In this document: positions 1,576 to 18,600 of the stretch, piece by piece
Layout of the letters: each line of letters opens with the position of its first letter
How positions within the stretch are numbered: position 1 is the first letter of the stretch
Assembly (NCBI GenBank): GCA_024704765.1
Contig: JAKMXF010000255.1
Span: 372,001 to 436,000, forward strand
Direction: 5' to 3'
DNA: 64,000 nucleotides
DNA from: Oopsacas minuta
Taxonomy: Eukaryota; Animalia; Porifera
The notes under the pieces: model-generated
What the model saw: the letters and a program-made list of their open reading frames with translations, nothing else
The model's database searches: none
Told to the model about the DNA's origin: nothing
Program-made: the position numbers and the translations under genes

Positions 1576-2718
1576 TCACTTAGAGCTAAAGCTCATACAA
1601 TTAATATTCTTATCCATGGTCCGTTTAAGAAAATGACACCTAAGACAGAGAGCATTAGAATGTGGCTCTGTAGTATCCTTGGTAAGATTGTCTAGAGTTT
1701 TGAGCCTGTACGGGTAGCAGGGAGAGGATCCGATCTTACATCTACGGCATATCTGTCCCCATCCCTCCCAGGTGTAGTTAGAGGTCCAATCACAGAGACA
1801 TTCTTTACAACGGAAATATCCTTGAAATCGTCTTGGCTGCTTCAAACGTTGAGGAAATGAAGCAAAAGACAATGTGTCTCCATTTTGATAAATAGGTACA
1901 CGGAGGGGGGTAGCCTCCTGACAGAGGGGAGTGATCGGGGTGCGATGAGGATTAGGGGGTAGAGGAGGAGTAGAGGTTATAATGAGGGGAATATGTTTAG
2001 AAAAGTGACCTGAACTGTCTCCAGGGAGAGAGTGAAATTGATTTCCACTCTGTGTAGTATCAAATACGGTAGGGAGAGACCGTGAGCTCTCCTTGGCCGG
2101 TACTTGCTCAGGACTTAGAGATCCTATTGGTGATTCAGTATCATAATCAGATATACTGGGGCTAAGTAGTACAGTAGAGCTAGGCTCTGTACTCAGTGTA
2201 GAGCTACTGGGAGTAGAACTTAATATAGAGCAGACAGCCTGAGAACGAAACCTCAGTCTCTGTCGTCTGGATTCAGAGGGGAAATGGAGAGGAGGGTGAG
2301 GTTGCATCTGAGAGGAAGATAGAGAAGATTGTTCCTTTTTATCAGATTTACTTTCGGATATTATGGGTAATTCTTTCTGGGGTTTTGGTACTGGTGAAGG
2401 AATTTTCTCATCAGCGGTAGGCTTGTCATCTTCAGATTTTACAGCTGCTAGCTGTATACCAGGTTTTGTATTAGTTATAGATATTTCCTTATCTCCAGTC
2501 ACTATTTCAATGCTAGCCTCCTGGGTGTGTTTAGGTCGTGTTATAGTATAGGTAGTAGTATCATCTGTGTTAATAGTGAGTTTTATTGTGATATGTGATG
2601 AATCTTTGAGGATTATCTCTGTAGCCTCCTTCTCAGACTCCAGAGGTTCATCTTTGGGTATTAAGGGGGTAATACTCTTCTTCTTACGATTTCTTTTACA
2701 GGATATACAACTACCCAT
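1576..2718 (-). CDS. ZAR1/RTP-type 3CxxC zinc-finger protein with a Ser/Pro-rich linker and an N-terminal lipidation motif; intronless
   Basis: The C-terminus GYFRCKEC...WTSNYTW...GQICRRC...YPYRL...PHSNALCLRC matches the zf-3CxxC pattern (three CxxC plus His). The N-terminus is MGSCISCKRNRKKK. Confidence 0.8.
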   Translation of the reverse strand: MGSCISCKRNRKKKSITPLIPKDEPLESEKEATEIILKDSSHITIKLTINTDDTTTYTITRPKHTQEASIEIVTGDKEISITNTKPGIQLAAVKSEDDKPTADEKIPSPVPKPQKELPIISESKSDKKEQSSLSSSQMQPHPPLHFPSESRRQRLRFRSQAVCSILSSTPSSSTLSTEPSSTVLLSPSISDYDTESPIGSLSPEQVPAKESSRSLPTVFDTTQSGNQFHSLPGDSSGHFSKHIPLIITSTPPLPPNPHRTPITPLCQEATPLRVPIYQNGDTLSFASFPQRLKQPRRFQGYFRCKECLCDWTSNYTWEGWGQICRRCKIGSSPCYPYRLKTLDNLTKDTTEPHSNALCLRCHFLKRTMDKNINCMSFSSK

Positions 2719-3571: not shown

Positions 3572-6500
3572 CTACAATCGGACTGTTGATGCAACTAGTT
3601 TCTTATGAAGACTAGTTACATTATTAGTAACACTCCCTCTGTCCAGGGCAGATAAACTTGATGAGAGTCGTTCACTTTCGAATGGGTTGGTAGAATTTGA
3701 TCGTAACTGAGTAACCTCAGAATATATATTCTCACAAACAGGGTTATGATAACTTTCGCCTTTCTCTGGAAATTCATCTAGCATCTTTTCTTTCAGATTG
3801 GGCGTAGCTCCTTCCATTGAATCTTTGATCTCATTCGTTTCATCATAAATTGGATTATTATACGCTAATACATGAGGAATATCGCCATATTCTAACAAGT
3901 GGGAAGGAGGGTCTGCATTGATAACAGCCCGATCCACCATTTCAGATATTTTCTTAGATCGAACCTTGGATCGGGAAAATTTGGATCGAATAGAATTGTT
4001 ACGGACGGCATACAGCATGAAGAACAGGAACCCTAGGACCGCAATAAATGAGGTACACACCCATCTATAGTATGGAACAGGTATGTAGATATTGACTAAG
4101 GTAACCACCCAGGGAGCTATCATAAACGGAGCAAGAAGGAAGTGACTAGAAAGGGAAAATTTAGCAACACGTACCAATTCAATGTTTCTATACACACAGC
4201 ACCTAATTAGTGATATTATAAGGACGATAAATGTGATGAAGAAGATCACCAAAATCGGTTCTATCATGGACCAAATGATGGAAATTTCTTTTGACAGCCA
4301 ACAGTGTTGGTCTTTCACTCCGAGATTGTCCGAGTCAAAGACAACACGGAATACCGTTAGAGGAATAGGGACAATCCAGCCTAGAATGAGCAATATAATG
4401 TGGATTCGTCGTTTCATCTTTGGTAGTACGAACTTGAAACAAATAGCAGCTCCGTCAGCTAGGAAACAAGTTGTGGAGGAGAGTGAGCAGAAGTATACTA
4501 CCATAGCAATGATATTGCAATGTTCCTGTATCAGTGAATAGTTCAGGATACCTATCACATGGCTAATCAGGAAGAGAAGAATGGAAACACACAAACTAAA
4601 CTGTGCGATGTAGATATCACTCTCAAGCAACTCTCTACCCAGAAACGTTAACAAAATGATCGATAAAAGCAAACACATAACCGCAATACCACTGATACCA
4701 TAGACAATATAATTTAGTATGACGTCAATAGGATTGACAGCTGTGATTGGTTCAGTGAGCACCATGAATGTGGAGAGATGAGCACTCGAACATGTAACTG
4801 AGTCATTAGTGATATCATATACATCTAATCCTATTGAACTCCATCCATACAATGCTGTATCCCAGTAAACACAGTGTGTATTGTAATAGCTAGATTGGGT
4901 GTCCAAAAGAGCAAAGTTGATGTGAATGGGGTTTCTCAATTGATTCGGTATATCAGTCGCTAGTTCTACCATTACGAGAGTGCTAGCTGGTACGAAATCA
5001 CTGTAAAACCCACTGGAGATCTGAGTCAGTATTCTACCTAAGTTATTGCTGTACATCACAGAGACGCCAAGTTTTGAGTTACTATCTAGGAGGGCATTGG
5101 TTAAAGATGATGGAAAAGACAACATGTTATCTTCTATAATGGTAGAATTGGTTTGCTCACAGTTGGATATAAGATTGAAATCACTAGAATTGAGGGTGAT
5201 ATCGATCTCCCTTACCAGTAGCAAGATATTGTCACTAGTAATGGAAATGCATGAACTGTTTGAAGTTTTTGCGTTTAAATTAGAGAATAATTCCAAAGCA
5301 TTAAACAAGTTATTCGTCATGTTCTGATACTCTTGTGTGAAGAACTCAATATTCTGAATGCTAACGAGTGTAGAAAATATGCAAAGGAATCTATCATTCA
5401 GTGAAGCGATGAGAGATCTTTTTGTAACGAAATCTAAGTTGAGAATGGAGTTGAGGGCATATGTTGTGAGGTTCAATGTGAGTTCTATTTCCTCAGGACT
5501 TAGGATACTCCTTCCACACACGATAAAGGCAGTGTTTTGTACCACTGCTGAGATGTTATTCGAATTAATCTGAGTCGAATCACCAAAAATATCGTTATAG
5601 TCATGCAAATGAGTGGATAGAATTTCAAATGGATTTCTTATACAATCGTCCAGATTGGCTTCTTCCCAGACCCCAGCTATAGAACATACACGAGATGCAT
5701 TTCCTTCCATAAATGAAGGATCAATGTATTGACATGGCATTATTGCAGTTTGGGAATATTCTGTTGCTGGCCAATTTATTCGCGAAATTTTTTCACTTTC
5801 ACACGTCAACTCACTCCTCGGATATTGACAATACCTTCCTTTATAACCATAGTAGCATGTACAGTCAAATTTACTAATTCCGTCTAGACACTCTCCTCCG
5901 TTTCCACAAATAACATCTTCGCAATCATTAATATTGTACTGACAATTCTCTCCAGCAAAACCGGTCTCACATTTGCAGTCATAATTATCTAGATTGGGTG
6001 TACAGCTCCCGTGTTGGCAAGGATTCTCTAAGCATTGATTAAAATATTCACAAACTGGGCCCAGGTATTCGTCCGTGCAAATGCATTCGTAGTCATCTAC
6101 ATGATCAATACACGCCCCTCCGTTAAGACATGGTTCTGATAAACATTCATTTATCTCGACTTCACACAACCGACCAGTATAACCTACAAAACAATTGCAT
6201 GTAAAGTTATTCAAGAGATCAACGCATTCTCCGCTTTCACAATAATTTGTCTGGCATTCATCGATTTCATTCTCACAGAGTACTCCCTCATAGCCTGCTA
6301 CGCAATCACATGAAAACTCATGTACTTCTTTCTGCTTACAAACAGCTCCATTACTACATGGTTCTTTTTGATAAAGACTGAAGTAGCCGAAACATTCGAG
6401 TCCATCTGGAGCTGTTAAGGCTTCGAGTGTTTCAGAGTATGGTCCGGGACCAGCACTTGTCATTGCTCTAACTTGGATAGTGTATCTTGTAGAAGGGGTG

Positions 6501-9500
6501 AGGTTTGTAATGTTCATTTCAGGAATCGTACTGTTGAATATTTGAATTGTTCCTTGCTCAGTGCCATTTGATATGAATGTTAGTAATGCATGATAAAGAG
6601 ATATTTCACCATTTCTATCTTCTATAGATAATTCGTTCCATTCAACATGAAACCCAGTTAGTACATTTGAAATCATGACATTATCTGGTGCAGCACTGGG
6701 ATTAGATTCTGGCATTGTTATGTTAACGTAGGATCTCGGGCCGTTCCCAATAGAAGTAGATGCGTGTATACTGAATTGGTAAGTGATACTAGGATGGAAG
6801 TTCGTCATTGTGAAGTTTGTCCACTCGCTATTAATATTGATGTTTTGTTCCTCTGTAAGAATCTCAGATGCGAAATAGGTAATAGTTTGGTGGATGATAA
6901 CTCCATTCTTGCTGTAAGAAGGAATTTGGTTCCAGGTTAATCTGACAGAAGTTGGAGATATAATATGAACTGTAAAGTTACCTGGAGCAGCATTAGGTAT
7001 ACTTTCCATGGTTCTGATGGTAACGGTTTTGGAATGCGGGCTTGCACCAATGATATTTCTTGCTAACACATAAATACTGTAATATGTGTATGGCTTAAGG
7101 GAGGGAATACTTATTTGGGTGGAATTATCAGTTGAAAACATGTCATGTGTCGCGTTTGAAGCATTAGATTGCCAGTAATACACGATATATTGAAGAATAT
7201 GTCCGTTTTGTTCAAGATACGATATGGGATTCCAGTTGACAAGAATTTTATCAGATGAGATAGAAGATACGTTTACATCTTGAGGTGGAGCAGATGGTGA
7301 TGCAGGTAGTGTTGCTAGGTTAATCGCAGTGCTGAAGGGACCAACTCCTACAATAGTAATTGCTCTTATTTGAATGACGTAATGGAATGCTTCCTCCAAT
7401 TTCTTGAGGATATAATGTGTAGAATTTGTAAAGTATATTATTTGATTCACTTGAATTTCGTAACCAGTAATTATTCCGTTTTGATTTGATTCTATGGGAG
7501 AGAACCAACTCAGTTCAATACATGTAGTGTTAACGATGGAGTGTATGTACTGAGGAGGGCTAGTAGGTCTGCTCTGAGCTGTTTCAATTGAAATTAATGT
7601 ACTCGGGCTAGAGCCAGCATTATTAATAGCAATGACACTGACTCTGTAACGCGTATATTCATTCAATTCAGTTACTAGTATCATAGTGTCAGAAGCAGCA
7701 CTAATCTTGTCGTACACTTGTAGATTAGTCAATGATTCTGTAACAGATATTTCGTATCCAGTTATGTCACCATTTCTACTCGTATCAGGTGTTAATGACC
7801 ACGTAACGACAAATGTAGTGGAAGTGATGGAATTCACTGAATCAATGGTTGGACCAACTGATGGAGCTTCTTCACTTGTAGTAAAGTTAAGTAAGGGAGT
7901 GTATGGACCAGTTCCGGGTGATGTTTCAGCTGCTATTCTTATTGAGTATTCAGTATTTGGTGATAAACCGTATACACTATAGCTAGTCAGGCCAGGTTCT
8001 ATTTTTATTATTGATTCGAATGAGGAAATTTCAAGTTCGTAATGTATCAAGACTCCATTAATAGCCACATTAGAAACAGGGGTCCAGCTGATCGAGACTG
8101 TACGTGATGTTATATTATTTAGCATTAGTAAGGTGGGTGCTGCCCCTGGGATATCCTGAAGACATCGCTCGACTATTGGACTACTGAATGGACCAACACC
8201 TGCTTCTGTTACTGCAGCAATACTAATGCTGTATTCATGATAAGGCTTTAGAGAAGTGAACATGAACACATTTATCCCTCCACTAACGTAGAATATTCTA
8301 GAATAATTAGAAGAGAGACCAGAAATGTACACTTCGTAACCTACGATAATTCCGTTTTGTCCTCTCTTAACAGGTGGCATCCAAACTACTTCAATTTCGG
8401 TGGACGAATGTGCTATCGTTGTGACACCTTGAGGAGGATCAGACGGAGCATCCTCTAAGGTTCTAATGGCAATCCAGCTGGAATATGGCCCAGGTCCAAT
8501 CGACGTGTAAGCACGAACTTGTATCATATACGTTTCATCTACATAAAGTTGATATAACGTGTATACTGTGTTGTTTGAGGAAGCAGTTCTATTAAGCATA
8601 TCTTTAAATGTTCCAACATAATGCACCTCGTAACTTGTTATTTCTCCGTTGATATCTACTGCCAGAGGAGTAACCCATGTCAACAAGATGGAAGTTATAT
8701 TGGGAGTACCTTCTAACTCCCTTGGAGAACCCGCTGGCACATCTTGATGTGTTCTCACTTCTACAACATTACTATATGGACCTACACCGAGGCTATTGAC
8801 TGCACGTACTTCTACAGAGTATAATTCATACTCTTCCAGGCCCGTAATGGTAATGATGGTCAGATTAGTTGAGTATAAATAGGAGTGATTGTCGTGATGT
8901 GTGCCATTTACACGAACTTCATATTCGAGGATTAATCCATTGGTTTCAGATTCTTCTACAGAGTTCCAGAATATTTTGAGAGCTGTATCATGTAGTGCTA
9001 TCGCGGTAACAGATCGAGGATGTCCAGATGGCGCTGATTCTAATGTCCTAATTTCAACAACTTCACAAGGACCATTCCCCAAGTTATTATAACTACATAT
9101 TGATACCGTATAAACCTCCCATTCCTGTAGCCCAGTTAACATGATCTCTGTCTCGGAAGTTGTTTCGGTTCGAATGTTAGTATCGAAATTATTACCGAAA
9201 TATTGCACTCTATACGAGATAGAATCGCTATTTAAATCTCGGTCTGGAGGTGAATACCAATGAATAACTAAGGAAGTAGACTGTACCGAAAAGAATGTGA
9301 TATTTTGAGCAGCACCAGAAGGAGGAGCAGACATGGTTTTATAGATAACCTCACCAGAATAGGGACCTGATCCAATCTTAGTCCATATCCTAGCCTTAAT
9401 TTGGTAAGCTACATTCTCTTCTAACTGTGCTAACGTCAGCTCAACAGGACTAGTCCATATAGCGTCAGGAAGAATTTCTATACTCCTTAATTGATCTAGC

Positions 9501-12500
9501 ACTTGTGCGTAATAAGCGACTTGATACTGAGTTATTATACCATTAGTATTATCAGCTGATGGTGGAGTTAGAGTGAGGTTAATGGATTTAGCACCAACAT
9601 ATGTGACTTCTATTTCTGGGGGGCTGATGGGTACTCCTTCATTAGTAGTGATATTCATTAAGTTACTGTAAGGACCCAATCCTACTGACGTGGATGCTGA
9701 TATTCTCACTTGATACTCTGTGAATTCATTCAGATTAGTTAGAGTGATTTCAGTTAATGTTTCTATCACTGTTGTGTATAACGTATCCTCAGTCATTTTA
9801 TAATCTATAGTATAACCTGTTAGTATACCATTACGATCTGGTGATGGAGGAGCAGCCCATTCTATCCTGATAGAGTTTGATGTTATATCTGTCACTCGTA
9901 TATTCTCAGGTGGGGCACTAGGATAACTTTCTAGTGTCCTTATTGTGTAGTAAATTGAATCTGCTGAATAGAGTACTCCTGATGTAGTTATGTAGAAGCT
10001 GTAATAGCGATAAGGCTTAAGATTAGAGTTAGTAATGGGATAATAACTAGAAGTAGGAGAAGTCACTTCATAATTACCATTTCCGAAGCTCACGTCAAGG
10101 GTATGCACTTGATTGGTCACGCTCACTCTAGATGTAGATGGACTGAATAATATAGAAAGGTAGAGTTTAGCATCTATAGAAGTGACATCAAAACTAGCTA
10201 TAGCAACCGTGAAAGTGATGATATCACATGAATAAGTGTTAGAAAGATAATAGTTAGTATTGCAGCCACATTCATAACTTCCTATTAAGTTAGTGCATGT
10301 TTGTTCACATACATTTGTTCCGGTACTACATTCATTAATGTCAACACACCTCTCAGGGTTCTGTAGCAGTTGATAACCTGACAGACAGTCACACTTGTAG
10401 GATCCAGGTTGGTTGACGCATGTTTTCGGTGATGGACATAAAGTTGCATCTTCAGCACATTCATCTATATCATTGCAAGTTTTCTCATCAGTATCAAGTC
10501 TATATCCAGTAATACAAGCACATGTATAACTTCCCATCGTATCAGTACATTGCTGACTACAGATTCTAGGCACTTGGCTACACTCATTAATGTCTTGACA
10601 CGATTTCTGGTCTAAACCTAGTATATAACCAGTGCTACATTGACAAGAATATGATCCAGCGCTATTTAAACAGGAGTGATCACACCCATGGGTTTGAGTA
10701 CATTCGTTAATGTCGTAACAAGAACGTTTATTCGATGACAGATAATAACCACTACGACACGAGCAAGCAAATGATCCCGCAGTGTTCGTGCAAATATGAC
10801 TACAACCTCCATTATTAGTTCCGCACTCATTGGTATCCAGACAAGATCTGCTATTTGATGATAAATAGTAACCAGTGTTACAACTGCATGTGAATGAACC
10901 GTGAGTATTGGTACAAGTGTGCGCACAACCTCCGTTACCGTTAGAACACTCGTTAACATCATTACAATATCTACCACTTGATAACGTAAAACCACTATTA
11001 CAACTACATGTATAGGATCCAGCAGTGTTCAAGCAATTTTGAGCACAATTATCAGTGTTTTCTGTACATTCATTTATTTCATCGCAGGTCTTACCACTAG
11101 AAGACAATCTATAACCGTCATAGCAATCACAGTAATATGAACCTGCTGTGTTTTGGCAATAGTGATGACAACCATCAGTGTTAACAGAGCACTCATTTGT
11201 ATCATAACAAGTTTTTCCATTGCTGCTTAGGACATATCCAGTATTACAACGGCAATAGAATGATCCTGTCGTGTCATAACAACGGTGGTCACAACCTCCA
11301 TTATCGGTACTACATTCATTTGTGTCATAACAGTACTTCCCAGATGATGATAGATAATATCCTGTTCTACAACCACAAGTAAATGAACCCTGACTATCAT
11401 AGCAATAATGTGAACAACCTCCACTAGAAGAAGAACATTCATTGATATTAACACAAGATGAACCTGATTTTTGATAACCAGTTGCACATTCACATGTATA
11501 GCCTCCTCCACTTCCAACATTTTTACAATATTCTGTCACTGAATGACAGGTGTCAAGTCCAGCAGTGCATTCGTTTACGTCTAAAGGAATTATAAAATGA
11601 ATTTGATGACTAGCTAGCGCGATTCGTTAATCATAAATGTTTGCTCTGAAGACGTCAAAATTATTCCTGACTACGGCCATGTAAAGTAATATACTTGTTT
11701 CTAATCCCCGCTAGTACAAAATTTTATCTCCCGTCAGGAAATATTATATTTATATTTACTTGTATAGTTGAAATATTCAATATATTGTTTATACCAAGAG
11801 TAATGAGATAATCGAAGGTTAAAAACAGTTAACATAGTAATTGGTCCCAGTTTCCGAGGAAATTCCGGATGATAAACAAGTAACTTACTTTACATGACAA
11901 ATTAGATAATATTTAATTTAAGATTCTTACCATATGTACAATATGTCCCTGTCCAGCCGCTTAAGCATTGTTTTGCTCCTGTACTCAAACAGGTGTAATG
12001 GCCATAATAATCGTTACGTGCTTTGCAATATGTAGTGCATAAAGATCCGTAATAATCAGTGTCGCATTGAAAACGATATTTTATTTCAAAATATCCATTT
12101 TTTCTGGACTTTCTAGAGGTGGACCAACTAGAAGAGGCGTAATTCCAGGTTATATACCACTTATATGTATGGATAAAATCATTATTACTCCAACCGCCAT
12201 CATCATCCCATTCTTCTACTTCAACTCTTATTCTTCCCTAATCAATAGACACAGGTACATTAACCTCGGATAAGATATACCCCCTCGGGAAACAAAAATT
12301 AATAAGTATTTATTATCCGAATATTCTCATATACATTTAGTGCTGTTTATGACAATTTACTTACTTCCATGCTGAGTCGGAATATTATATTGTAAACAAC
12401 ACAATATTATTAAATCTCAATTGTTGTTTGTCTGTTGATATGTAAATATACTATTGTTTTATGAATAGGCTTGCTCTAAATGGTTACACAGTACGCTGAA

Positions 12501-13904
12501 TTTGAATTTCGCATTTTCGAGTTTCCCACATGTAAATTTATCGTTGTTTTATGAATATAAAATAACAAATTGGCAAAATCTCAAAATTTACGTAGATACT
12601 TGCTCTCAGCGGCTACAAAGGGGGTTGATCTTTCAAAATAATTCAATAATATATGTCATATACGTATATTTCTGAATTACATAGCTCTAAATATATCCAT
12701 ATTATATTACTCAAAATGGGCCGTCAATTTGGGGAATAATGAATACCTCGATGCGCGATGCGCCGAGTTCATCGCAAAGCGACGAGCCAAAGGCTCGTAT
12801 GAATAAATAATTAAAGCTATTGTTAAACTTCAATATTCAATGAATCCATATTATACAACACTAGAAGTACCTATTGTGTAAAACTAATATATATTTAACA
12901 TCCAAGAACAATAGAATTATTACTGATGACATATTGCTGCTATAAAATGAATATTTTTCATTTACCTTCAGCAAAAAAACTATAAATATTTGTGCGTTGA
13001 AAGGATCCAAATACAGTCAACTACTCATAATCGGGACACATAGGTTCTAGCCCTTTCGTCCGGATTAAGCGGAGTTCCCAATTAACCGGAGATTTTCTAA
13101 TAATATTACTAAAGTGCAGCACTATTCTATTTTTCCAGTCGCAGAGTCCCCTGAAGCAAGTTAACAAATCTATGGTTGAGTCAAACCCATCCAATGTACA
13201 AACTTTAACATTTTTGGATCGTTTAGTGCCTTCGTGAATCAATGTTGATAATAATGACTGGAAAATAGAATTTGATTTGGCCAAATCCCAAATTTAGTTT
13301 GTATTTATCTAAATTTTGTACATATACCTAGATTATTAGAATTTCCTAACTCAAGAGAAATTTCTTCTTGATTGATTATTAATTTTCACTTGATTACCAG
13401 AAAATGATCAGTATTAACTTTAGTAGAGATGATTCCGTTCATGGAGATTTGTCCCAATTATGCGAAGTTGACTGTATAGTCAGACCTTGAAGCCTGTTAT
13501 ATTATTAGACAAATCATAACCATTAAAGTATATTAAGCTTTACTTAAACCTTACTGAGAATGAATTGATGTTGTGAGGTCATATTGTCTGTTGGGTGTTC
13601 CTGAATCATCTCCTGATTTGTAATATTTAGAAGTCTCCTTTCTACAACTGCTAAAACTTGAATAACACTCTCGGTACTTAAAATAGAATAGTGCATCACA
13701 GTCACCCCCAAAACTGTCACAACTACTTCCATCCACTTTCTTATCACTACTAAATTTGTAAAAGTTGATTGATACTGTACCTGTGCTCTCAACTAAAGCC
13801 TAAAGAAAACAAATCATTTAATTAATAGTGTATTTCCTTGAGCTGAATGTTGTTCAATTCTAACTGCGAAATATATAGCATAGAATAAACCACTTTCCTA
13901 TCAT
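3572..13904 (-). CDS. Adhesion GPCR with a Notch-ligand-type N-terminus: MNNL/C2 - DSL - 11 cbEGF - ~13 FN3 - 5 EGF - HormR - GAIN/GPS - 7TM (~2,850 aa)
   Basis: Exons: candidate signal-peptide exon 13865-13904 (MIGKWFILCYIFR); 13555-13792 (ESTGTVSINFYKF...DGSSCDSFGGDCDALFYFKYREC); 11931-12237 (GRIRVEVEEWDDD...YRFQCDTDYYGSLCTTYCKARNDYYGHYTCLSTGAKQCLSGWTGTYC); and 3572-11580. The phase-1 intron 11581-11930 (GTAAG...TTTAG) joins the last two in frame as Y-D-VNEC. The GPS reads CVYWD...W...C...HL/STFMVL, followed by seven hydrophobic segments. The GPCR body is high confidence; the first exon and the exon 2/3 junction are less certain. Confidence 0.88.
12404..12805 (+). mobile_element. Non-autonomous Helitron-like element, copy 1 (in the aGPCR intron)
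   Basis: Colinear similarity to 14591-15070. It starts ATATTATTAAATCTCAATT followed by (GTTT/CTGT)-like repeats and ends with the hairpin ACGAGCC-AAA-GGCTCGT. Confidence 0.6.
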
Positions 13905-13977
13905 TATGTTTACATTAGTGCAGTTCTATCCAACCTTATTGGAACATGAAACCCTTCCATAAACAACAATAATCACC

Positions 13978-14337
13978 GTGGCATGGAAATGCGTAGAAAC
14001 TGTAACAGCAAGGGGCATCATGGCAGTCCGAAGGAGTTTATCCAGGAATTTCTGGGCTGGCACTTTTATTGCAGGAGTCTTCTGGGGTCGCAAATTTTTG
14101 GATGGTAAAATAGTGATTCTATACAATTTCGAGTTTAACGAGCGATACTTAGTGTCATTCATGGCTACTGAACTTGTACTTTTAGGTGCTCGCCAAGCAC
14201 CTAGATGTACTCCTGATCCTGGGACTAATCCGCCCACTTTTCGGAATTTCCACGCTTGGGAATTTGGGGTAAAAGAACAATCTCTGAGCGGTGCACAGAT
14301 TCTCCTAAGATGCCTAATCTCAGAAGTTAAATTCTAA
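13978..14337 (+). other. Unassigned GC-richer ORF island upstream of the aGPCR (possible small membrane protein or TE relic)
   Basis: 119-aa ORF with one hydrophobic stretch (NFWAGTFIAGVFWG) and a possible GT-AG intron (GATG|GTAAAA...CTTTTAG). No family recognised. Confidence 0.25.
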
Positions 14338-14590
14338 GTACTATAACTACAATAATAACAGACTTACCACATTGAGGAGAAATATACATGAGAATAAGAT
14401 TCCAATACTGATTCTCATTTCTTTGATTCCTACAATTGAATAATTGTGTATTATAAAAATTAGAATCAACCAATATCATGCAAAGAGATTCGGGTTTACT
14501 ACTAGAGAAAGAAAATTGACAATGACCTAACTGACAACCCTCCTAGCTCCTCGCGATTTTTAGGTATACATAAAAAGGCTCGGTTTGAAA

Positions 14591-15070
14591 TCTATATTAT
14601 TAAATCTCAATTATTGTCTGTTTGTCTGTTTGTTTGTTTGTTGTCAAGAAAAGGATTTACAGTATGCAATTTTGAAATTGTCACATAACTATTTCTTTAT
14701 CGTGTTTATCAAGGAAGTAAATAGAATTCAATAAAACTACACTAATTACAACGAACATGCTGAATCCGATTTTCACACTTTTGGATTAATCATATGTAAA
14801 TTTAATTATTGTTTTTACGAATATAAAGTAAACAAATTATCCAAATCTCAAAATATACATACAGGCTTGCCCTCAACGGCTACTAAGGGGGTTGATCTTA
14901 CAAAATAATTCAATAATATATATGTCATATACGTATATTTGTGAATTACATTTTTCTAAATATATCTATATTATAATACTCAAAGGGGCCCGTCAATTTG
15001 GAGAATAATGAATACCTCGAGGCGGAATGCGCCGAGTTCATCGCGAAGCGACGAGCCAAAGGCTCGTATG
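14591..15070 (+). mobile_element. Non-autonomous Helitron-like element, copy 2
   Basis: The 5' end TCTATATTATTAAATCTCAATT is followed by a TGTCTGTTTGTCTGTTTGTTTG microsatellite. The 3' end has the same ACGAGCCAAAGGCTCGT hairpin as copy 1. No clear CTAG terminus. Confidence 0.6.
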
Positions 15071-15620
15071 TATAAATATATTTTCTCATTCTTATGAAAT
15101 GGAACAGAAGAGCGTTAGTCAGGATAGAAATAAATAAATTGTACAGATATATACAGTATTGTGTGCGCGGATTTCTTAAGTCTAAAGAGCCCTACCTAAC
15201 AACTCACTTGTTTGAAATCTGTCAATATTTGATCGTTCTGTTAGCTTATCCCAATTGATGTGTTATAAAGCAATGAAATTACCAAATTTATATACTTTAT
15301 AGCTGGCCTTAAAGAGGTGACATAGTTCAACATTTGAGATGCTTGATGTATAATTCACTTGAATATAATGCTTATTGTAAGGGTAAAGATAATGTTATTG
15401 GGCTGGTATAGAGATTATTTCTTAAATGTAAGGGATAAAAGAATGTTCAATAATCAGAGGAATGAAATTAGATAAGTAATATCATCCAGGTGGTATAAGA
15501 CCAAATATTCCATTCATTCATTAAGATTATTGTATACTACAAGTCTATAATATATCTGTATACAAACAAGTCTAAAATTCTACCAAAAATAACACGAATG
15601 GTATAAAATAATAAAGAACA

Positions 15621-18600
15621 CTAAATCTGTTCTAAAAGTTTTATTCTATTGTCAATTGCAAATCCAATCTTTTCCAGAGAAGTGGTGTAGCTGGAGGTTA
15701 GCTCAAGGAGAGTTCGTTTCCTCACATCATAAGTCAGCTGAAGAATAATAAAATTAATGAATTCTGATTGTAGCAACAAAATAAAAATGCCTAATAAATT
15801 TCGAATATGTAAAAACAAGAAAATATGACGAGAAACATAACTCTGAGGCTAAGCTGATAAACACGAATAATTGTTAAATCAACTTACAGAAGTAGATTGG
15901 AGTTCAGTGTCTGGTTGAATCTTCATAACATTCCTAAGAAAATAATCTAAGTCAATATCATTGAAGTAAGCAAGTGCGTTAGTAACATAAATCTGTAATT
16001 CCTTGTATACAGGGATAAGAGTAGAGGTAATGAATGTATTGAGAGTATTGATATCTTCTGAAGTGTCCTAGAGCGAACGGATTGATATATATTAAATAAA
16101 CTAAAATTGATAATAGTACACTACAAGGTTTCTCAACCTGTGGCCATATGACCAAACTTGTACCCTAAGTCGACGTGGGTGTGGTCAAGCCCCATGATAT
16201 ACTGTACTGTACTGTAATTACGCATAATAACGGCATAAAATCAAAATGCAGTATAAAATTGAAAATTTTTCATATATAAACTTACTGGAAATTTAGAAGA
16301 TTGCTTAGCTTTCTTTGATTTTTTCGTTTTAGGAGATACTAGTGTGAATACACATACCATACATATGTTGATGATACTGATTGTCTAATAGAGGTTAATT
16401 AGGGAAATAATTCGGTATTGATGGAAACATTCAATGTTAATATCTAAACCAGAAACTTACAAACAAGAGAGTTGTAATCTTCTCAACTGTTAGGAATATT
16501 CTATCAAAAGTCCCTTGCATAAATTCTTCGTTAGAAATTTCCTTCATAATCTCTGAAGATAATAACATTTGTTAAATAACACAAAATTAAACAATTCAAA
16601 ATATTGCATTACAGTTTGAGTGTAAGATTTAATATAAATATGAGACTTGAGTGAAGTAATGTATATCACTAAACAATATATAAATTGAAAGAGTTGAATA
16701 GAAACTTACCTATAAGTGGAACAGCTAAGAATTGTACATCCATTTCTATACTCTTCGATTCTATAGATAACATTGAAATACATATATTGAATGAAATAAG
16801 TAGTATTTCATTACATTTTGGGGCAAGGGACTCAAGCGCTAGGCTGGAAACACGGTATCATATAATGATTAATATGTAATACTCACCAGCTATTGATCTC
16901 AATACAGATTGTAACAACTTGAAGAAGCTCCTTATCACTTGTGCATTCTTGTTAGGTGGAATGAGTAATTCCAGCATTGGTAGCTGAGGAGACCTCAATT
17001 TAGCCTGACAGGGTGAATAAATAAAATGTTCCCTACTCATACACTTTGCATACAAATATTACCAGAGAGTATTCTGTGTTAGTTTGAGCTGCTAGTGCAT
17101 ATGATGGATGTGTTACTGCAGCTTCTATTTCTTTATCAAAATTATCTAAACCTTTCTCGAATAAAGAAATAAGTTCTTGCCATCTAATAGCTCCCTCATT
17201 AACAGCTCCATCCTTTGTCTTAATAATATTACCATCAAGCTCAGTGTATAGCAGACACACCTCTACTAAGCTTCCTATACATGTTATGAGTGTTCCTCTC
17301 ATTCGAATCCAGATGCACTAAACAAATATTAATAACTTAAGGAATAGAATTACAGTGTAATCTGCAATTGAAATTAATTCCTTATTCCAAGGATATTAAT
17401 CCTGGTAGAAATTATGAAGAATAGACCAACCGAGCTCAGTTAGAAACCCAGATAAATTAGCAAAAGGGTTTAATAGATGAACCTATCACTTACTTCTGCA
17501 TTAAATGTATCTTTCACATCTTTGTCAGTAAATTTTCTAATCATAAAATAGGAAATAAATAAAGAGAAATACAACTAATAAAGAATTAACAAAAGCAGCT
17601 ACCTGATAGATGGAGTATAATCCTCTATCACATTTAGGTCTCTGTTATCTTCGTATGTTTCTGAGTCTAAACCTACAGTACATCTTTAAATAAATACATC
17701 TAGAACAGATAAACAACTTTGGCATAACTTAGAATGTTTGTACTGTTGCGTGTCAGAATTACTGCCTGTATTACCGATACCATGGATATTCATAATCCAT
17801 GTCAGAATTGCTGCCACTGGTATATGACTTCGTTGATTATACATGCGAAATTAGTTCCGATATTTACTCTAACTGAATTCATATTAGTATACATAGCTGT
17901 CCAAGGATCAAGCTTCATTTCACGATACCTTGAATCAAAGTTCAACCCTTTCACACCTACTGAATATATATTTCATTCTCAGATGGACCTTAGTAAAGTA
18001 TGGGGTACTGACATCGAAATTTTAGCTCTGACTTCTATCCTTGGAGTAGATATTTTCATTTGCAACTTCCACAACAATAATGAAGATAAGTTAGGGGTCA
18101 AGATGGTATCGATATCACAGTACACATGATGGCTTTTCATATAACAGTGGTAGCAATTATGACATGGATTATGAATATCCATGGTACCAGTAATACAGGC
18201 AGCAATTATGACACGCAACAGTACTCAACTAACCTTTTACCACATCAAACCAAGACTCAAAACTCGGTAAATGATTCTTCAATTCTGTCAACTTAGGACT
18301 ATAAGATATTAAGAAAATAAAGTCAGGTCCCAATTATTCTATACTTTAGTAATACATATATTACAGCTGTTCTCATGTAAATGGACTGAGAAATATATCA
18401 AACAATTTGCAATAGGCAAGGGAGTTGCCACACAGATTTCATTAAGTATTGAATAAATCAACTGAGTGAACAACAAGTATTGTAATTGGACCAGCTAGAT
18501 AGGTTCAACTATTCCCTTCCTCTCCTGACGAGACATCCTACGTAATTATCCATGAATGTATATTCTATTTCTACTGCTTAAAACATACTTGGAGAAACCA

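What the first reader, a model, noticed from the sequence alone, without database searches (positions are those of the whole stretch)
11931..13904. Notch-ligand head (MNNL/C2 + DSL) spliced onto an adhesion GPCR
Seen in sequence: two minus-strand exons that the ORF track does not show in frame encode SGT-like 'STGTVSINF...DGSSCD...CDALFYF', a C2-like 'IRVEVEEWDDD...NDFI', and a complete six-cysteine DSL domain (11934-12066: YRFQCDTDYYGSLCTTYCKARNDYYGHYTCLSTGAKQCLSGWTGTYC). A 350-bp phase-1 GT-AG intron joins the DSL in frame to the 8-kb EGF-FN3-EGF-HormR-GAIN-7TM exon. That exon has no signal peptide of its own, and the DSL exon has no TM segment. Established knowledge: MNNL+DSL defines Delta/Serrate/LAG-2 ligands, which are normally single-pass proteins. 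The Jagged1 Notch-binding loop FCRPRDDFFGH appears here as YCKARNDYYGH, with the aromatic, basic and acidic positions kept. Inference: this is a Notch-ligand/GPCR chimera that could bind Notch on a neighbouring cell and signal back through G proteins. I do not recognise this architecture from any described aGPCR family.
Basis: partly seen in the sequence, partly recalled or inferred. Interest (0 to 1): 0.93.

Follow-up and report, generated by a model that had tools for sequence, protein, structure and literature searches.

The report
Notch-ligand head on a sponge adhesion GPCR
A glass sponge gene, copied into RNA, puts the tip of a Delta/Jagged-type Notch ligand on a force-sensing adhesion GPCR; related genes share this undescribed layout, but what the tip binds is untested.

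Summary
The window is from Oopsacas minuta, a glass sponge. On the minus strand, a signal-peptide exon and two small exons precede an 8-kb exon.

- **Head:** the small exons encode an MNNL/C2-like domain and a six-cysteine DSL domain (Pfam DSL E 1.7e-16; the pre-DSL part matches certified MNNL domains, hhalign 95.6%, E 1.2e-8).
- **Body:** the 8-kb exon encodes 11 calcium-binding EGFs, 12 FN3, 5 EGFs, HRM, GAIN/GPS (H-L|S) and 7tm_2. Its nearest solved relatives are latrophilin-3 and other adhesion GPCRs.
- **Splicing:** RNA contigs show the 5'UTR|exon 1, exon 1|exon 2 and 13555|12237 junctions. They break exactly at 11931 and 11581, and intron depth is about 40 times lower. The 11931|11580 junction itself was not seen.
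- **Correction:** exon 2 in the assembly lacks one base that the RNA carries. This explains why the public gene model skips exon 2.
- **Conservation:** five homologous loci in three other assemblies keep the same exons and intron phases, so this is a gene family.

No DSL + 7TM protein was found outside the family, and no paper describing one. Notch binding and G-protein signalling remain inference. The Notch-contact residues are kept here but vary among relatives.

This scan has already noted MNNL-DSL heads on GAIN stalks at other loci of the same genome.

The parts
15208..15237 (-). 3' end of a non-coding 5'UTR exon (exon 0). A GT donor sits at 15207-15206. The exon extends further upstream by at least about 27 nt.
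   Evidence: The unaligned end of the X4 RNA contig upstream of 14429 matches 15237-15208 and is followed by GT in the genome.
14368..14429 (-). Exon 1: short 5'UTR, ATG at 14418-14416, and a 17-residue signal peptide (MRISIGILFSCIFLLNV). Phase-0 GT donor at 14367.
   Evidence: Sequence. The X4 RNA contig joins its last bases to 13799. L002 has a homologous exon reading MRVSIGIFFTLLFLQYL. This exon is the start of public model P0001.
13555..13799 (-). Exon 2: N-terminal half of the MNNL/C2-like domain. It is 245 nt in the assembly, one base short of the expressed form (missing base between 13566 and 13565).
   Evidence: Translation. The RNA contig of depth 624 and a DNA contig both carry the extra base. 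Five homologs end ..SFS|gtaagt in phase 0. hhalign against MNNL domains.
12067..12237 (-). Exon 3, first part: C-terminal half of the MNNL/C2-like domain, including the acidic W-D-x-D loop.
   Evidence: Aligns to the C2 domain of Jagged-2 (5mw5) and Jagged-1 (5uk5, 4cbz). hhalign. D11 and D13 are invariant in the family.
11935..12066 (-). DSL domain with six cysteines. The exon ends at 11931 with a phase-1 GT donor.
   Evidence: Pfam PF01414, E 1.7e-16. The PDB hits, down to E 3.3e-09, are all Jagged, Delta, Serrate or DLL.
11581..11930 (-). Intron 3: 350 bp, GT-AG, phase 1.
   Evidence: Sequence. RNA depth is about 12 here against 350-650 in the flanking exons, and RNA contigs end at 11931 and 11581.
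10244..11580 (-). Start of exon 4: about 11 calcium-binding EGF modules, the first beginning D|VNEC. The right-hand boundary is approximate.
   Evidence: Pfam EGF_CA, cEGF and FXa_inhibition, 10-11 stretches each. Cysteine density is 6 per 40 residues.
6419..10243 (-). Twelve fibronectin type III domains (boundaries approximate).
   Evidence: Pfam fn3, E 3.4e-134, 12 stretches. The region is cysteine-free.
5819..6418 (-). Second EGF block, about 5 EGF modules (boundaries approximate).
   Evidence: Pfam EGF, hEGF and EGF_TEN. Cysteine density.
5636..5809 (-). Hormone-receptor motif (HRM) domain.
   Evidence: Pfam PF02793, 25.8 bits against a cutoff of 26.2 here and 29.7 bits in two homologs.
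4757..5635 (-). GAIN region ending in the GPS motif. The predicted cleavage triad is H-L|S, with the Ser codon at 4774-4772, followed by the tethered-agonist-like STFMVL.
   Evidence: Pfam GPS, 28.1 bits against a cutoff of 22.5. H and S are invariant and L nearly invariant in 11 homologs. Aligns to the ADGRL3 GAIN-B/GPS segment 'TCSCNHLANFAVL'.
4004..4720 (-). Seven-transmembrane domain of the secretin/adhesion class.
   Evidence: Pfam 7tm_2, 39.6 bits against a cutoff of 20.6. All 17 PDB hits are adhesion GPCRs, ADGRL3 best at E 1.1e-13. Seven hydrophobic helices are visible in the sequence and in the AF2 secondary structure.
3572..4003 (-). Cytoplasmic tail of about 143 residues and the stop codon (3574-3572). 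No recognised domain.
   Evidence: ORF end. No Pfam hit.

Best explanation
**Shown.** This is a real, expressed gene of the glass sponge Oopsacas minuta. It encodes an adhesion-class GPCR of about 2,870 residues.
- The extracellular arm begins with the receptor-binding head of a Delta/Serrate/Jagged Notch ligand: signal peptide, MNNL/C2-like domain, DSL domain.
- It continues with about 11 calcium-binding EGFs, 12 FN3, about 5 EGFs, HRM and a GAIN domain with an intact H-L|S GPS site, then a 7tm_2 bundle.
- It belongs to a multigene family, partly in tandem arrays, in which the head exons and intron phases (0, 0, 1) are conserved.

**Inferred.** The protein sits in the membrane as a cleaved N-terminal and C-terminal fragment pair, like other adhesion GPCRs.
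- The C2-DSL tip binds a partner on an apposed membrane. The best single candidate is the sponge's own Notch, through its EGF11-12-like repeats.
- Tension along the long EGF/FN3 arm strains the GAIN domain and exposes the tethered agonist STFMVL, which switches on G-protein signalling in the ligand-bearing cell.
- The same pull could activate Notch in the partner cell.

I put the architecture at about 0.9 and Notch as the partner at about 0.3-0.4.
For: **Domains**
- Pfam DSL, fn3, EGF_CA and 7tm_2; GPS and HRM.
- Exon 3 aligns to Jagged C2 + DSL. The pre-DSL head matches MNNL domains (hhalign 95.6%).
- All 17 solved relatives of the C-terminal part are adhesion GPCRs.

**Gene structure**
- Splice sites and phases fit. 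The split Asp codon rebuilds the 'DxNEC' motif.
- Exon 4 has no start codon or signal peptide of its own.

**RNA (run X4)**
- Contigs carry the exon 0|1, 1|2 and 2|3 junctions.
- Contigs stop exactly at 11931 and at 11581. The single extra base at 11581 is the G shared by the intron end and the exon 3 end.
- Depth is 350-650 in the exons against 12 in the intron.

**Gene model**
- P0001 joins exon 3 to exon 4. It was predicted with BRAKER1/Augustus using RNA-seq mapped with TopHat (PMC10280926).

**Conservation**
- Five homologous loci in three ENA assemblies have exon 2, a DSL exon 3 and a 7tm_2-bearing exon 4 in the same order.
- In all five, exon 2 ends ..SFS|gt, exon 3 ends C..(Y/V)|G gt, and exon 4 begins with the rest of D-L-N-E-C.

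**Notch-contact face**
- It reads Y, K, R, D, Y against Jagged-1 F199, R201, R203, D205, F207.
- Glass sponges have Notch and its processing enzymes (PMC5684314; PMC10280926).
Against: - The 11931|11580 junction was not seen in any contig.
- The assembled haplotype has a 1-nt deficit in exon 2, which would truncate the protein if it is real.
- The Pfam MNNL model gave no hit on the two exon pieces scanned separately. Exon 2 alone has no PDB hit and only 52.5% in hhalign.
- No structure was obtained for the head. The GAIN-7TM AF2 model is unreliable (pLDDT 45).
- The DSL contact residues are not conserved in L002, L003 and L005.
- The EGF_DL_JAG-type EGF1-2 modules, which help Jagged bind Notch, are absent.
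- A separate Delta was reported in glass sponges (PMC5684314), so Notch need not depend on this protein.
- No binding, cleavage or coupling data exist.
Confidence: 0.8

Rival explanations
1. The chimeric gene is real, but the C2-DSL tip is not a Notch ligand. It would serve as a generic or diversified recognition module, for example lipid or matrix binding, homophilic adhesion, or self/non-self recognition between sponge tissues. The receptor would then be an ordinary adhesion GPCR with an unusual tip.
For: - The family is multigenic and partly tandem. The Jagged contact positions vary between paralogs, with Gln for R203 and changed acidic and aromatic positions in L002, L003 and L005.
- The closest non-sponge relatives of the head are cnidarian proteins with 6-26 tandem DSL domains, whose roles are unknown.
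- The locus is strongly polymorphic. RNA and assembly differ by 3-10%, and a 101-nt segment inside the C2 part is replaced by 110 other letters in the main DNA haplotype of the runs.
- The canonical EGF1-2 modules are missing.
Against: - In the window gene and in L001 the five DSL contact positions are kept or conservatively replaced.
- The C2-DSL pair is otherwise known only from Notch ligands. This rests on the top 150 hits and the named ones.
- Notch is present in this sponge (PMC5684314).
Confidence: 0.35
2. The window copy is a dead or null allele. The 1-nt deficit in exon 2 would be real, so this haplotype makes either no full protein or only the exon-2-skipped form of the public model, with half a C2 domain.
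For: - Exon 2 is 245 nt in the assembly, and the 13555|12237 junction then hits a stop after three codons.
- RNA contigs identical to the window are rare (depth 3.3), while the divergent intact haplotype reaches about 570. That pattern would fit nonsense-mediated decay.
Against: - Every listed contig that crosses the site, RNA (depth 624) or DNA (depth 4), carries the extra base. None supports the deletion.
- The assembly is an early PacBio/Illumina hybrid polished with Pilon (PMC10280926), so an indel error is plausible.
- The rest of the 8.6-kb reading frame is intact.
Confidence: 0.15
3. There are two neighbouring genes that were wrongly merged: a small secreted C2-DSL protein (exons 1-3) and a separate adhesion GPCR (exon 4).
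For: - The exon 3|exon 4 junction was not seen directly.
- Reading through the exon 3 donor reaches a stop after 9 codons, so an unspliced product is possible.
- ORF-style gene callers list the DSL ORF as a separate small protein.
Against: - Exon 4 has no initiator or signal peptide and opens in the middle of a codon that needs the G of exon 3 to make the calcium-binding EGF Asp.
- That phase-1 arrangement is kept in all six loci, although the intron ranges from 146 to 3,269 nt.
- RNA depth falls about 40-fold in the intron, and contigs break at the exact splice sites.
- Depth is similar across exons 1-4.
- The RNA-seq-guided public model joins them.
Confidence: 0.04

Closest known systems
Jagged / Delta / Serrate (DSL) Notch ligands, e.g. 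Jagged-1 (PDB 5uk5, 4cbz), Jagged-2 (5mw5), DLL4 (5mvx)
   Same: - Signal peptide, then MNNL/C2-like domain, then a six-cysteine DSL domain, in the same order and spacing.
- Exon 3 aligns to Jagged C2 + DSL at E 1e-15.
- The DSL contact loop FCRPRDDFFGHY appears as YCKARNDYYGHY.
   Different: - There are no atypical EGF1-2 (EGF_DL_JAG) modules after the DSL. It runs straight into fibrillin-type calcium-binding EGFs.
- There are 12 FN3 domains, HRM and GAIN.
- The membrane anchor is a 7TM bundle, not a single helix with a ubiquitinated tail.
- MNNL homology shows only at profile-profile level.
Latrophilin-type and other HRM-GAIN-7TM adhesion GPCRs (ADGRL3, PDB 8jmt and 7wy5; also ADGRF1, ADGRG2, ADGRE5, ADGRD1)
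   Same: - The HRM, GAIN/GPS, 7tm_2 module with an H-L|S/T cleavage triad and a hydrophobic tethered-agonist segment.
- Best solved match is ADGRL3, E 1.1e-13, covering GAIN-B to TM5.
   Different: - The distal arm is MNNL-DSL-EGF-FN3 rather than lectin and olfactomedin domains.
- Identity is low.
- The GPS has two cysteines rather than four.
CELSR / Flamingo (ADGRC)
   Same: A very long extracellular arm with EGF repeats, HRM and GAIN before a 7TM. It mediates contact between neighbouring cells. The CELSR1 GAIN region is a weak PDB hit.
   Different: CELSR carries cadherin and laminin-G domains and no C2-DSL head or FN3 array.
Cnidarian multi-DSL 'delta-like protein D' proteins (Nematostella XP_032232844, Sanderia, Actinostola, Stylophora)
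   Same: These are the closest non-sponge relatives of the head. The whole C2 + DSL profile aligns end to end (Nematostella residues 19-209, domain E 3.8e-26).
   Different: They carry 6-26 tandem DSL domains and have no FN3, GAIN or 7TM.
Other MNNL-DSL + GAIN loci of the same genome noted by this scan (s1-248613, s1-266701, s1-273561, s1-235691)
   Same: They are reported as the same head on an FN3/HRM/GAIN-GPS stalk.
   Different: Three are described as ending in a single TM helix, not a 7TM. I could not read those loci, so this is unverified.

Membership tests
Adhesion GPCR (class B2) | Seven-transmembrane domain of the secretin/adhesion type (7tm_2) | tested here: met
   Pfam PF00002, 39.6 bits against a cutoff of 20.6. 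All 17 PDB hits are adhesion GPCRs. Seven hydrophobic helices.
Adhesion GPCR (class B2) | GPS motif directly before TM1, with the H-L|S/T cleavage triad | tested here: met
   Pfam GPS, 28.1 bits against a cutoff of 22.5. The sequence reads ..TCSSAHL|STFMVL.. about 18 residues before TM1. H and S are invariant in 11 homologs.
Adhesion GPCR (class B2) | GAIN domain fold: a helical subdomain A and a beta-sandwich subdomain B that enclose the GPS | tested here: inconclusive
   The AF2 model has mean pLDDT 45 and is unusable for fold search. Its secondary-structure order (6 helices, about 9 strands, then the TM helices) fits GAIN. The ADGRL3 alignment covers GAIN-B.
Adhesion GPCR (class B2) | Autoproteolysis and tethered-agonist activation of G proteins | not testable with these tools
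   This needs biochemistry. Only the motif is present.
DSL Notch ligands (Delta/Serrate/Jagged) | DSL domain with six conserved cysteines | tested here: met
   Pfam PF01414, 60.7 bits against a cutoff of 24.2. The cysteines are invariant in the family alignment.
DSL Notch ligands (Delta/Serrate/Jagged) | N-terminal MNNL (C2-like) domain directly before the DSL | tested here: met
   hhalign of the pre-DSL head against 7 Pfam-certified MNNL domains gives 95.6%, E 1.2e-8, covering template columns 2-159 of 160. The Jagged C2 alignment supports it. Caveats: the Pfam MNNL HMM gave no hit on the separate exon pieces, the spliced protein could not be scanned, and no structure was obtained.
DSL Notch ligands (Delta/Serrate/Jagged) | Atypical EGF1-2 (EGF_DL_JAG / JAG1-like_EGF2) directly after the DSL | tested here: not met
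   Neither model hit the protein. The DSL is followed by D-V-N-E-C calcium-binding EGFs. Canonical ligands in the same search do hit these models.
DSL Notch ligands (Delta/Serrate/Jagged) | Single-pass type I membrane protein with a short cytoplasmic tail | tested here: not met
   The only membrane anchor is the 7TM bundle after a GAIN domain.
DSL Notch ligands (Delta/Serrate/Jagged) | Binds Notch EGF11-12 and activates Notch in trans | not testable with these tools
   Only the residue comparison is available: Y, K, R, D, Y at Jagged-1 positions 199, 201, 203, 205, 207. No multimer prediction or assay was possible.

The most novel reading that the evidence does not exclude
Glass sponges may have built a two-way, tension-gated signalling device. 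The Delta/Jagged-type tip engages Notch on an apposed membrane, and the tug between the two proteins does two things at once. It unfolds Notch's regulatory region in the receiving cell. It also pulls the N-terminal fragment off the GAIN domain in the sending cell, which unmasks the tethered agonist and starts G-protein signalling. In a largely syncytial animal without Wnt signalling, such a family could replace endocytosis-driven ligand pulling and supply patterning or contact signals.
Probability: 0.2. Interest if true: 0.92.

Novelty: new variant of a known kind. Interest (0 to 1): 0.76.

Why it matters
Notch ligands and adhesion GPCRs are both thought to work by mechanical pull across a cell contact. 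No protein has been described that joins the ligand's receptor-binding tip to the GPCR's force-sensing hinge.

A conserved, expressed family of such proteins in an early-branching and largely syncytial animal offers three things:
- a natural test of whether a DSL ligand can signal backwards through G proteins;
- a case of how domain shuffling wired the first animal contact-signalling systems;
- a lead on what glass sponges use for contact signalling, given that they lack Wnt (PMC5684314, PMC10280926).

It also corrects a public gene model, which omits half of the C2 domain.

Tried and rejected
- **Pfam MNNL on separate exon pieces:** no hit. The spliced protein has no reference, so I could not pass it to Pfam, AlphaFold or the atlas, and I did not type it in.
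- **Exon 2 alone against PDB sequences:** only a chance hit.
- **ESM Atlas features for a homolog's exon 2:** top scores 0.71-0.72, below the useful range. MNNL, C2 and NT-C2 clusters appear among the hits, which is a lead only.
- **AlphaFold2 of HRM-GAIN-7TM with 11 homologs:** pLDDT 45, so no fold search was run. The second structure job was not used.
- **Direct exon 3|exon 4 junction:** not seen at 95% or at 85% likeness. The contigs are fragmented by polymorphism.
- **Protein fragments spanning DSL to EGF from RNA assemblies:** none found.
- **Long proteins sharing the head:** only the window's own model.
- **7tm_2 in DSL relatives:** absent from all 11 DSL relatives over 900 aa that I scanned, out of the 17 relatives scanned in those three calls. 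Only the best 150 of 1,690 hits were visible, so the architecture search is not exhaustive.
- **Literature:** 'adhesion GPCR' + 'DSL domain' and 'MNNL' + 'GAIN domain' each returned 0 papers. Neither the Amphimedon GPCR paper nor the 2025 holozoan GPCR survey mentions DSL.
- **Alternative acceptor at 12232:** it would rescue the frame of the assembled sequence. I rejected it because the RNA uses 12237 together with an extra base in exon 2.
- **Identity of the three ENA assemblies:** not established. About 65-67% nucleotide identity and a higher GC content suggest other species.

Full report
**Identity of the window.** The 8-kb minus-strand ORF is 100% identical to an NCBI protein of the glass sponge Oopsacas minuta: 'EGF-like domain-containing protein', 2,788 aa (P0001). 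The genome paper describes a PacBio/Illumina hybrid assembly. Genes were predicted with BRAKER1/Augustus from RNA-seq mapped with TopHat (PMC10280926).

**Gene structure.** All exons are on the minus strand.

| Exon | Coordinates | Content |
|---|---|---|
| 0 | ends at 15208 | 5'UTR; recovered from the unaligned end of an RNA contig, followed by GT |
| 1 | 14429-14368 | ATG at 14418; 17-residue signal peptide |
| 2 | 13799-13555 | N-terminal half of the MNNL/C2-like domain |
| 3 | 12237-11931 | rest of the MNNL/C2-like domain, then DSL |
| 4 | 11580-3572 | EGF, FN3, EGF, HRM, GAIN/GPS, 7TM, tail |

The split codon G|AC gives the Asp of a calcium-binding EGF motif, 'D-V-N-E-C'.

**Domains**
- Pfam gives DSL at 60.7 bits (cutoff 24.2, E 1.7e-16) on exon 3.
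- On exon 4 it gives EGF_CA/cEGF (10-11 stretches), fn3 (12 stretches, E 3e-134), EGF and 7tm_2 (39.6 bits, cutoff 20.6).
- Scanned as a sub-sequence, the region before TM1 gives GPS at 28.1 bits (cutoff 22.5) and HRM at 25.8 bits (cutoff 26.2; 29.7 in two homologs).
- The GPS reads ..TCSSAHL|STFMVL... The H and S are invariant across 11 homologs.
- A PDB sequence search with HRM to TM7 returns only adhesion GPCRs. ADGRL3 is best (E 1.1e-13), and its 'TCSCNHLANFAVL' pairs with the sponge motif.
- An AlphaFold model of this part was too poor to use (pLDDT 45). Its secondary-structure order fits GAIN plus seven helices.

**The head**
- Exon 3 aligns to solved Jagged-2 and Jagged-1 from its 5th-7th residue. 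This reaches about 50 residues into their C2 domain and runs through the DSL (E 1.4e-15 to 1.6e-14).
- Exon 2 alone finds nothing in the PDB.
- I spliced exon 2 and exon 3 in a script for the window and four homologs, with X at the window's frame break. I then removed the DSL and compared the profile with seven MNNL domains that pass Pfam's threshold.
- hhalign gives 95.6% probability and E 1.2e-8, covering 2-159 of 160 template columns. The G-x-(F/V)-E/S-(L/I), C-D, C-D-x-x-F and W-D-x-D landmarks are in register.
- Exon 2 alone gives 52.5%, P 1.4e-4.
- The head is therefore an MNNL-DSL pair, detectable for the MNNL part only by profile methods. The same has been reported for sponge Delta (PMC5684314).

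**Transcription and the frame problem**
- Of four public runs from one sample, X1-X3 behave as DNA (introns covered) and X4 as RNA.
- An X4 contig of depth 624 carries the end of exon 1 joined to 13799. It also joins 13555 to 12237, skipping 1,328 nt.
- That contig has one extra base between 13566 and 13565. Exon 2 is then 246 nt and the protein reads ..TTSDSFS|GRIRVEVEE.
- The only DNA contig listed across the site has the same extra base.
- All five homologs read ..(T/S)(N/S)SFS|G(R/K/M).. at this point.
- As assembled, exon 2 is one base short. This explains why the public model P0001 jumps from exon 1 to exon 3 and lacks half of the C2 domain.
- The shortfall may be an assembly error or a null allele. 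This is open.

**The exon 3 to exon 4 junction**
- No contig shows this junction.
- At 85% likeness the X4 contigs end exactly at 11931 and at 11581. The one extra base at 11581 is the G shared by the intron's AG and the end of exon 3.
- Depth is 350-650 in both exons and 12 in the intron.
- This is the pattern expected from a graph that branches between spliced and rare unspliced RNA.

**Conservation**
- A search with the GAIN-7TM part found ten further proteins (48-58% identical), all from ENA assemblies and all called as bare ORFs.
- I fetched five of their loci from three assemblies. Every one has an exon 2 homolog, a DSL-bearing exon 3 homolog and a big ORF that carries 7tm_2, in the same order and strand.
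- Exon 2 ends in phase 0. Exon 3 ends C-x-(Y/V)|G. The first good acceptor downstream completes D-L-N-E-C-T-S..., homologous to the window's D-V-N-E-C-T-A... Intron 3 ranges from 146 to 3,269 nt.
- Some copies sit in tandem.
- The loci are about 65-67% identical to the window in DNA and have a higher GC content, so they probably come from other species. Their organisms are unknown to me.
- This scan has also noted MNNL-DSL heads on FN3/HRM/GAIN stalks at other loci of the same genome, some said to end in a single TM helix. I could not check those notes.

**How unusual it is**
- A profile of exon 3 searched against 1.84 billion representative proteins found 1,690 hits.
- The best are cnidarian proteins with many tandem DSL domains, such as Nematostella 'delta-like protein D'. 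Delta-like proteins of molluscs, flatworms and echinoderms follow.
- Across three Pfam scans I checked 17 DSL relatives, 11 of them over 900 aa. None has 7tm_2, GPS or HRM.
- A word-based search for long proteins with this head found only P0001.
- Full-text searches found no paper that combines adhesion GPCRs with DSL or MNNL. Two GPCR surveys that include sponges, one of them covering the O. minuta proteome, do not mention DSL.
- These searches are not exhaustive.

**Function (inferred)**
- The Jagged-1 DSL positions reported as Notch contacts (from my own knowledge of the Jagged-1 literature: F199, R201, R203, D205, F207) read Y, K, R, D, Y in the window protein and Y, R, R, D, Y in L001.
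- In L002, L003 and L005 position 203 is Gln and the other positions change.
- The atypical EGF1-2 modules of canonical ligands are absent.
- Glass sponges have Notch, its proteases and a separately reported Delta (PMC5684314).
- My preferred reading is a contact receptor whose C2-DSL tip binds a partner on another membrane and passes tension to the GAIN hinge. Notch is the best single candidate partner, but I put it below even odds.
- The main rival is a diversified recognition role. The paralog variation and the strong polymorphism of the locus favour that rival.

**Verdict.** The architecture is real, expressed and conserved. It is a new variant of adhesion GPCR, and I found it undescribed in the literature I could search, although the fused model is already present in public annotation under an uninformative name. 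The signalling model is untested.

Noticed in passing
window 12381-12830 and 14594-15078: Two copies (85-91% alike) of a repeat of about 450 bp sit in introns 2 and 0 of the gene. In the DNA runs its word depth is 25,000-180,000 against about 75-250 for flanking DNA, so it is a very high-copy element. A related unit at 70-74% identity is tandemly repeated 8 times in L002 and L003.
   Followed up: partly
window 12099-12199 (inside exon 3, C2-like part): In the main DNA haplotype of runs X1-X3 (depth 61-94), these 101 letters are replaced by 110 unalignable letters, an in-frame length difference. The RNA haplotype resembles the window here. This is also the least conserved stretch of the family alignment, so it may be a hypervariable loop region of the C2 domain.
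   Followed up: partly
window 10900-14600: At least three haplotypes are present in one sample's runs. The dominant RNA form differs from the assembly by 3-10% and is a minor form in DNA (depth about 9 against 62-103). RNA identical to the window has depth about 3. Possible causes are pooled or brooding tissue, allele-specific decay, or an assembly that mixes haplotypes. None was resolved.
   Followed up: partly
window 11634-11640 (intron 3): DNA contigs of X1-X3 carry 214 extra letters here compared with the window. This is an insertion/deletion polymorphism inside the intron.
   Followed up: no
window 1576-2718, minus strand: A 380-aa ORF lies downstream of the GPCR gene. Its only Pfam match is a weak, sub-threshold one to a 3CxxC zinc-ribbon domain (20.7 bits, cutoff 27). 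It is probably a separate gene.
   Followed up: partly
window about 15620-17300, minus strand: An upstream multi-exon gene ends with a stop near 15620, only about 350-400 bp before the 5'UTR exon of the GPCR gene. The intergenic spacing is very tight.
   Followed up: no
L002 and L004 (ENA ERZ25072740): Two loci on different contigs have identical exon 2 and exon 3 heads, but their big ORFs differ in length (2,653 and 3,858 aa). This could reflect haplotigs, a recent duplication, or gene conversion of the head.
   Followed up: no
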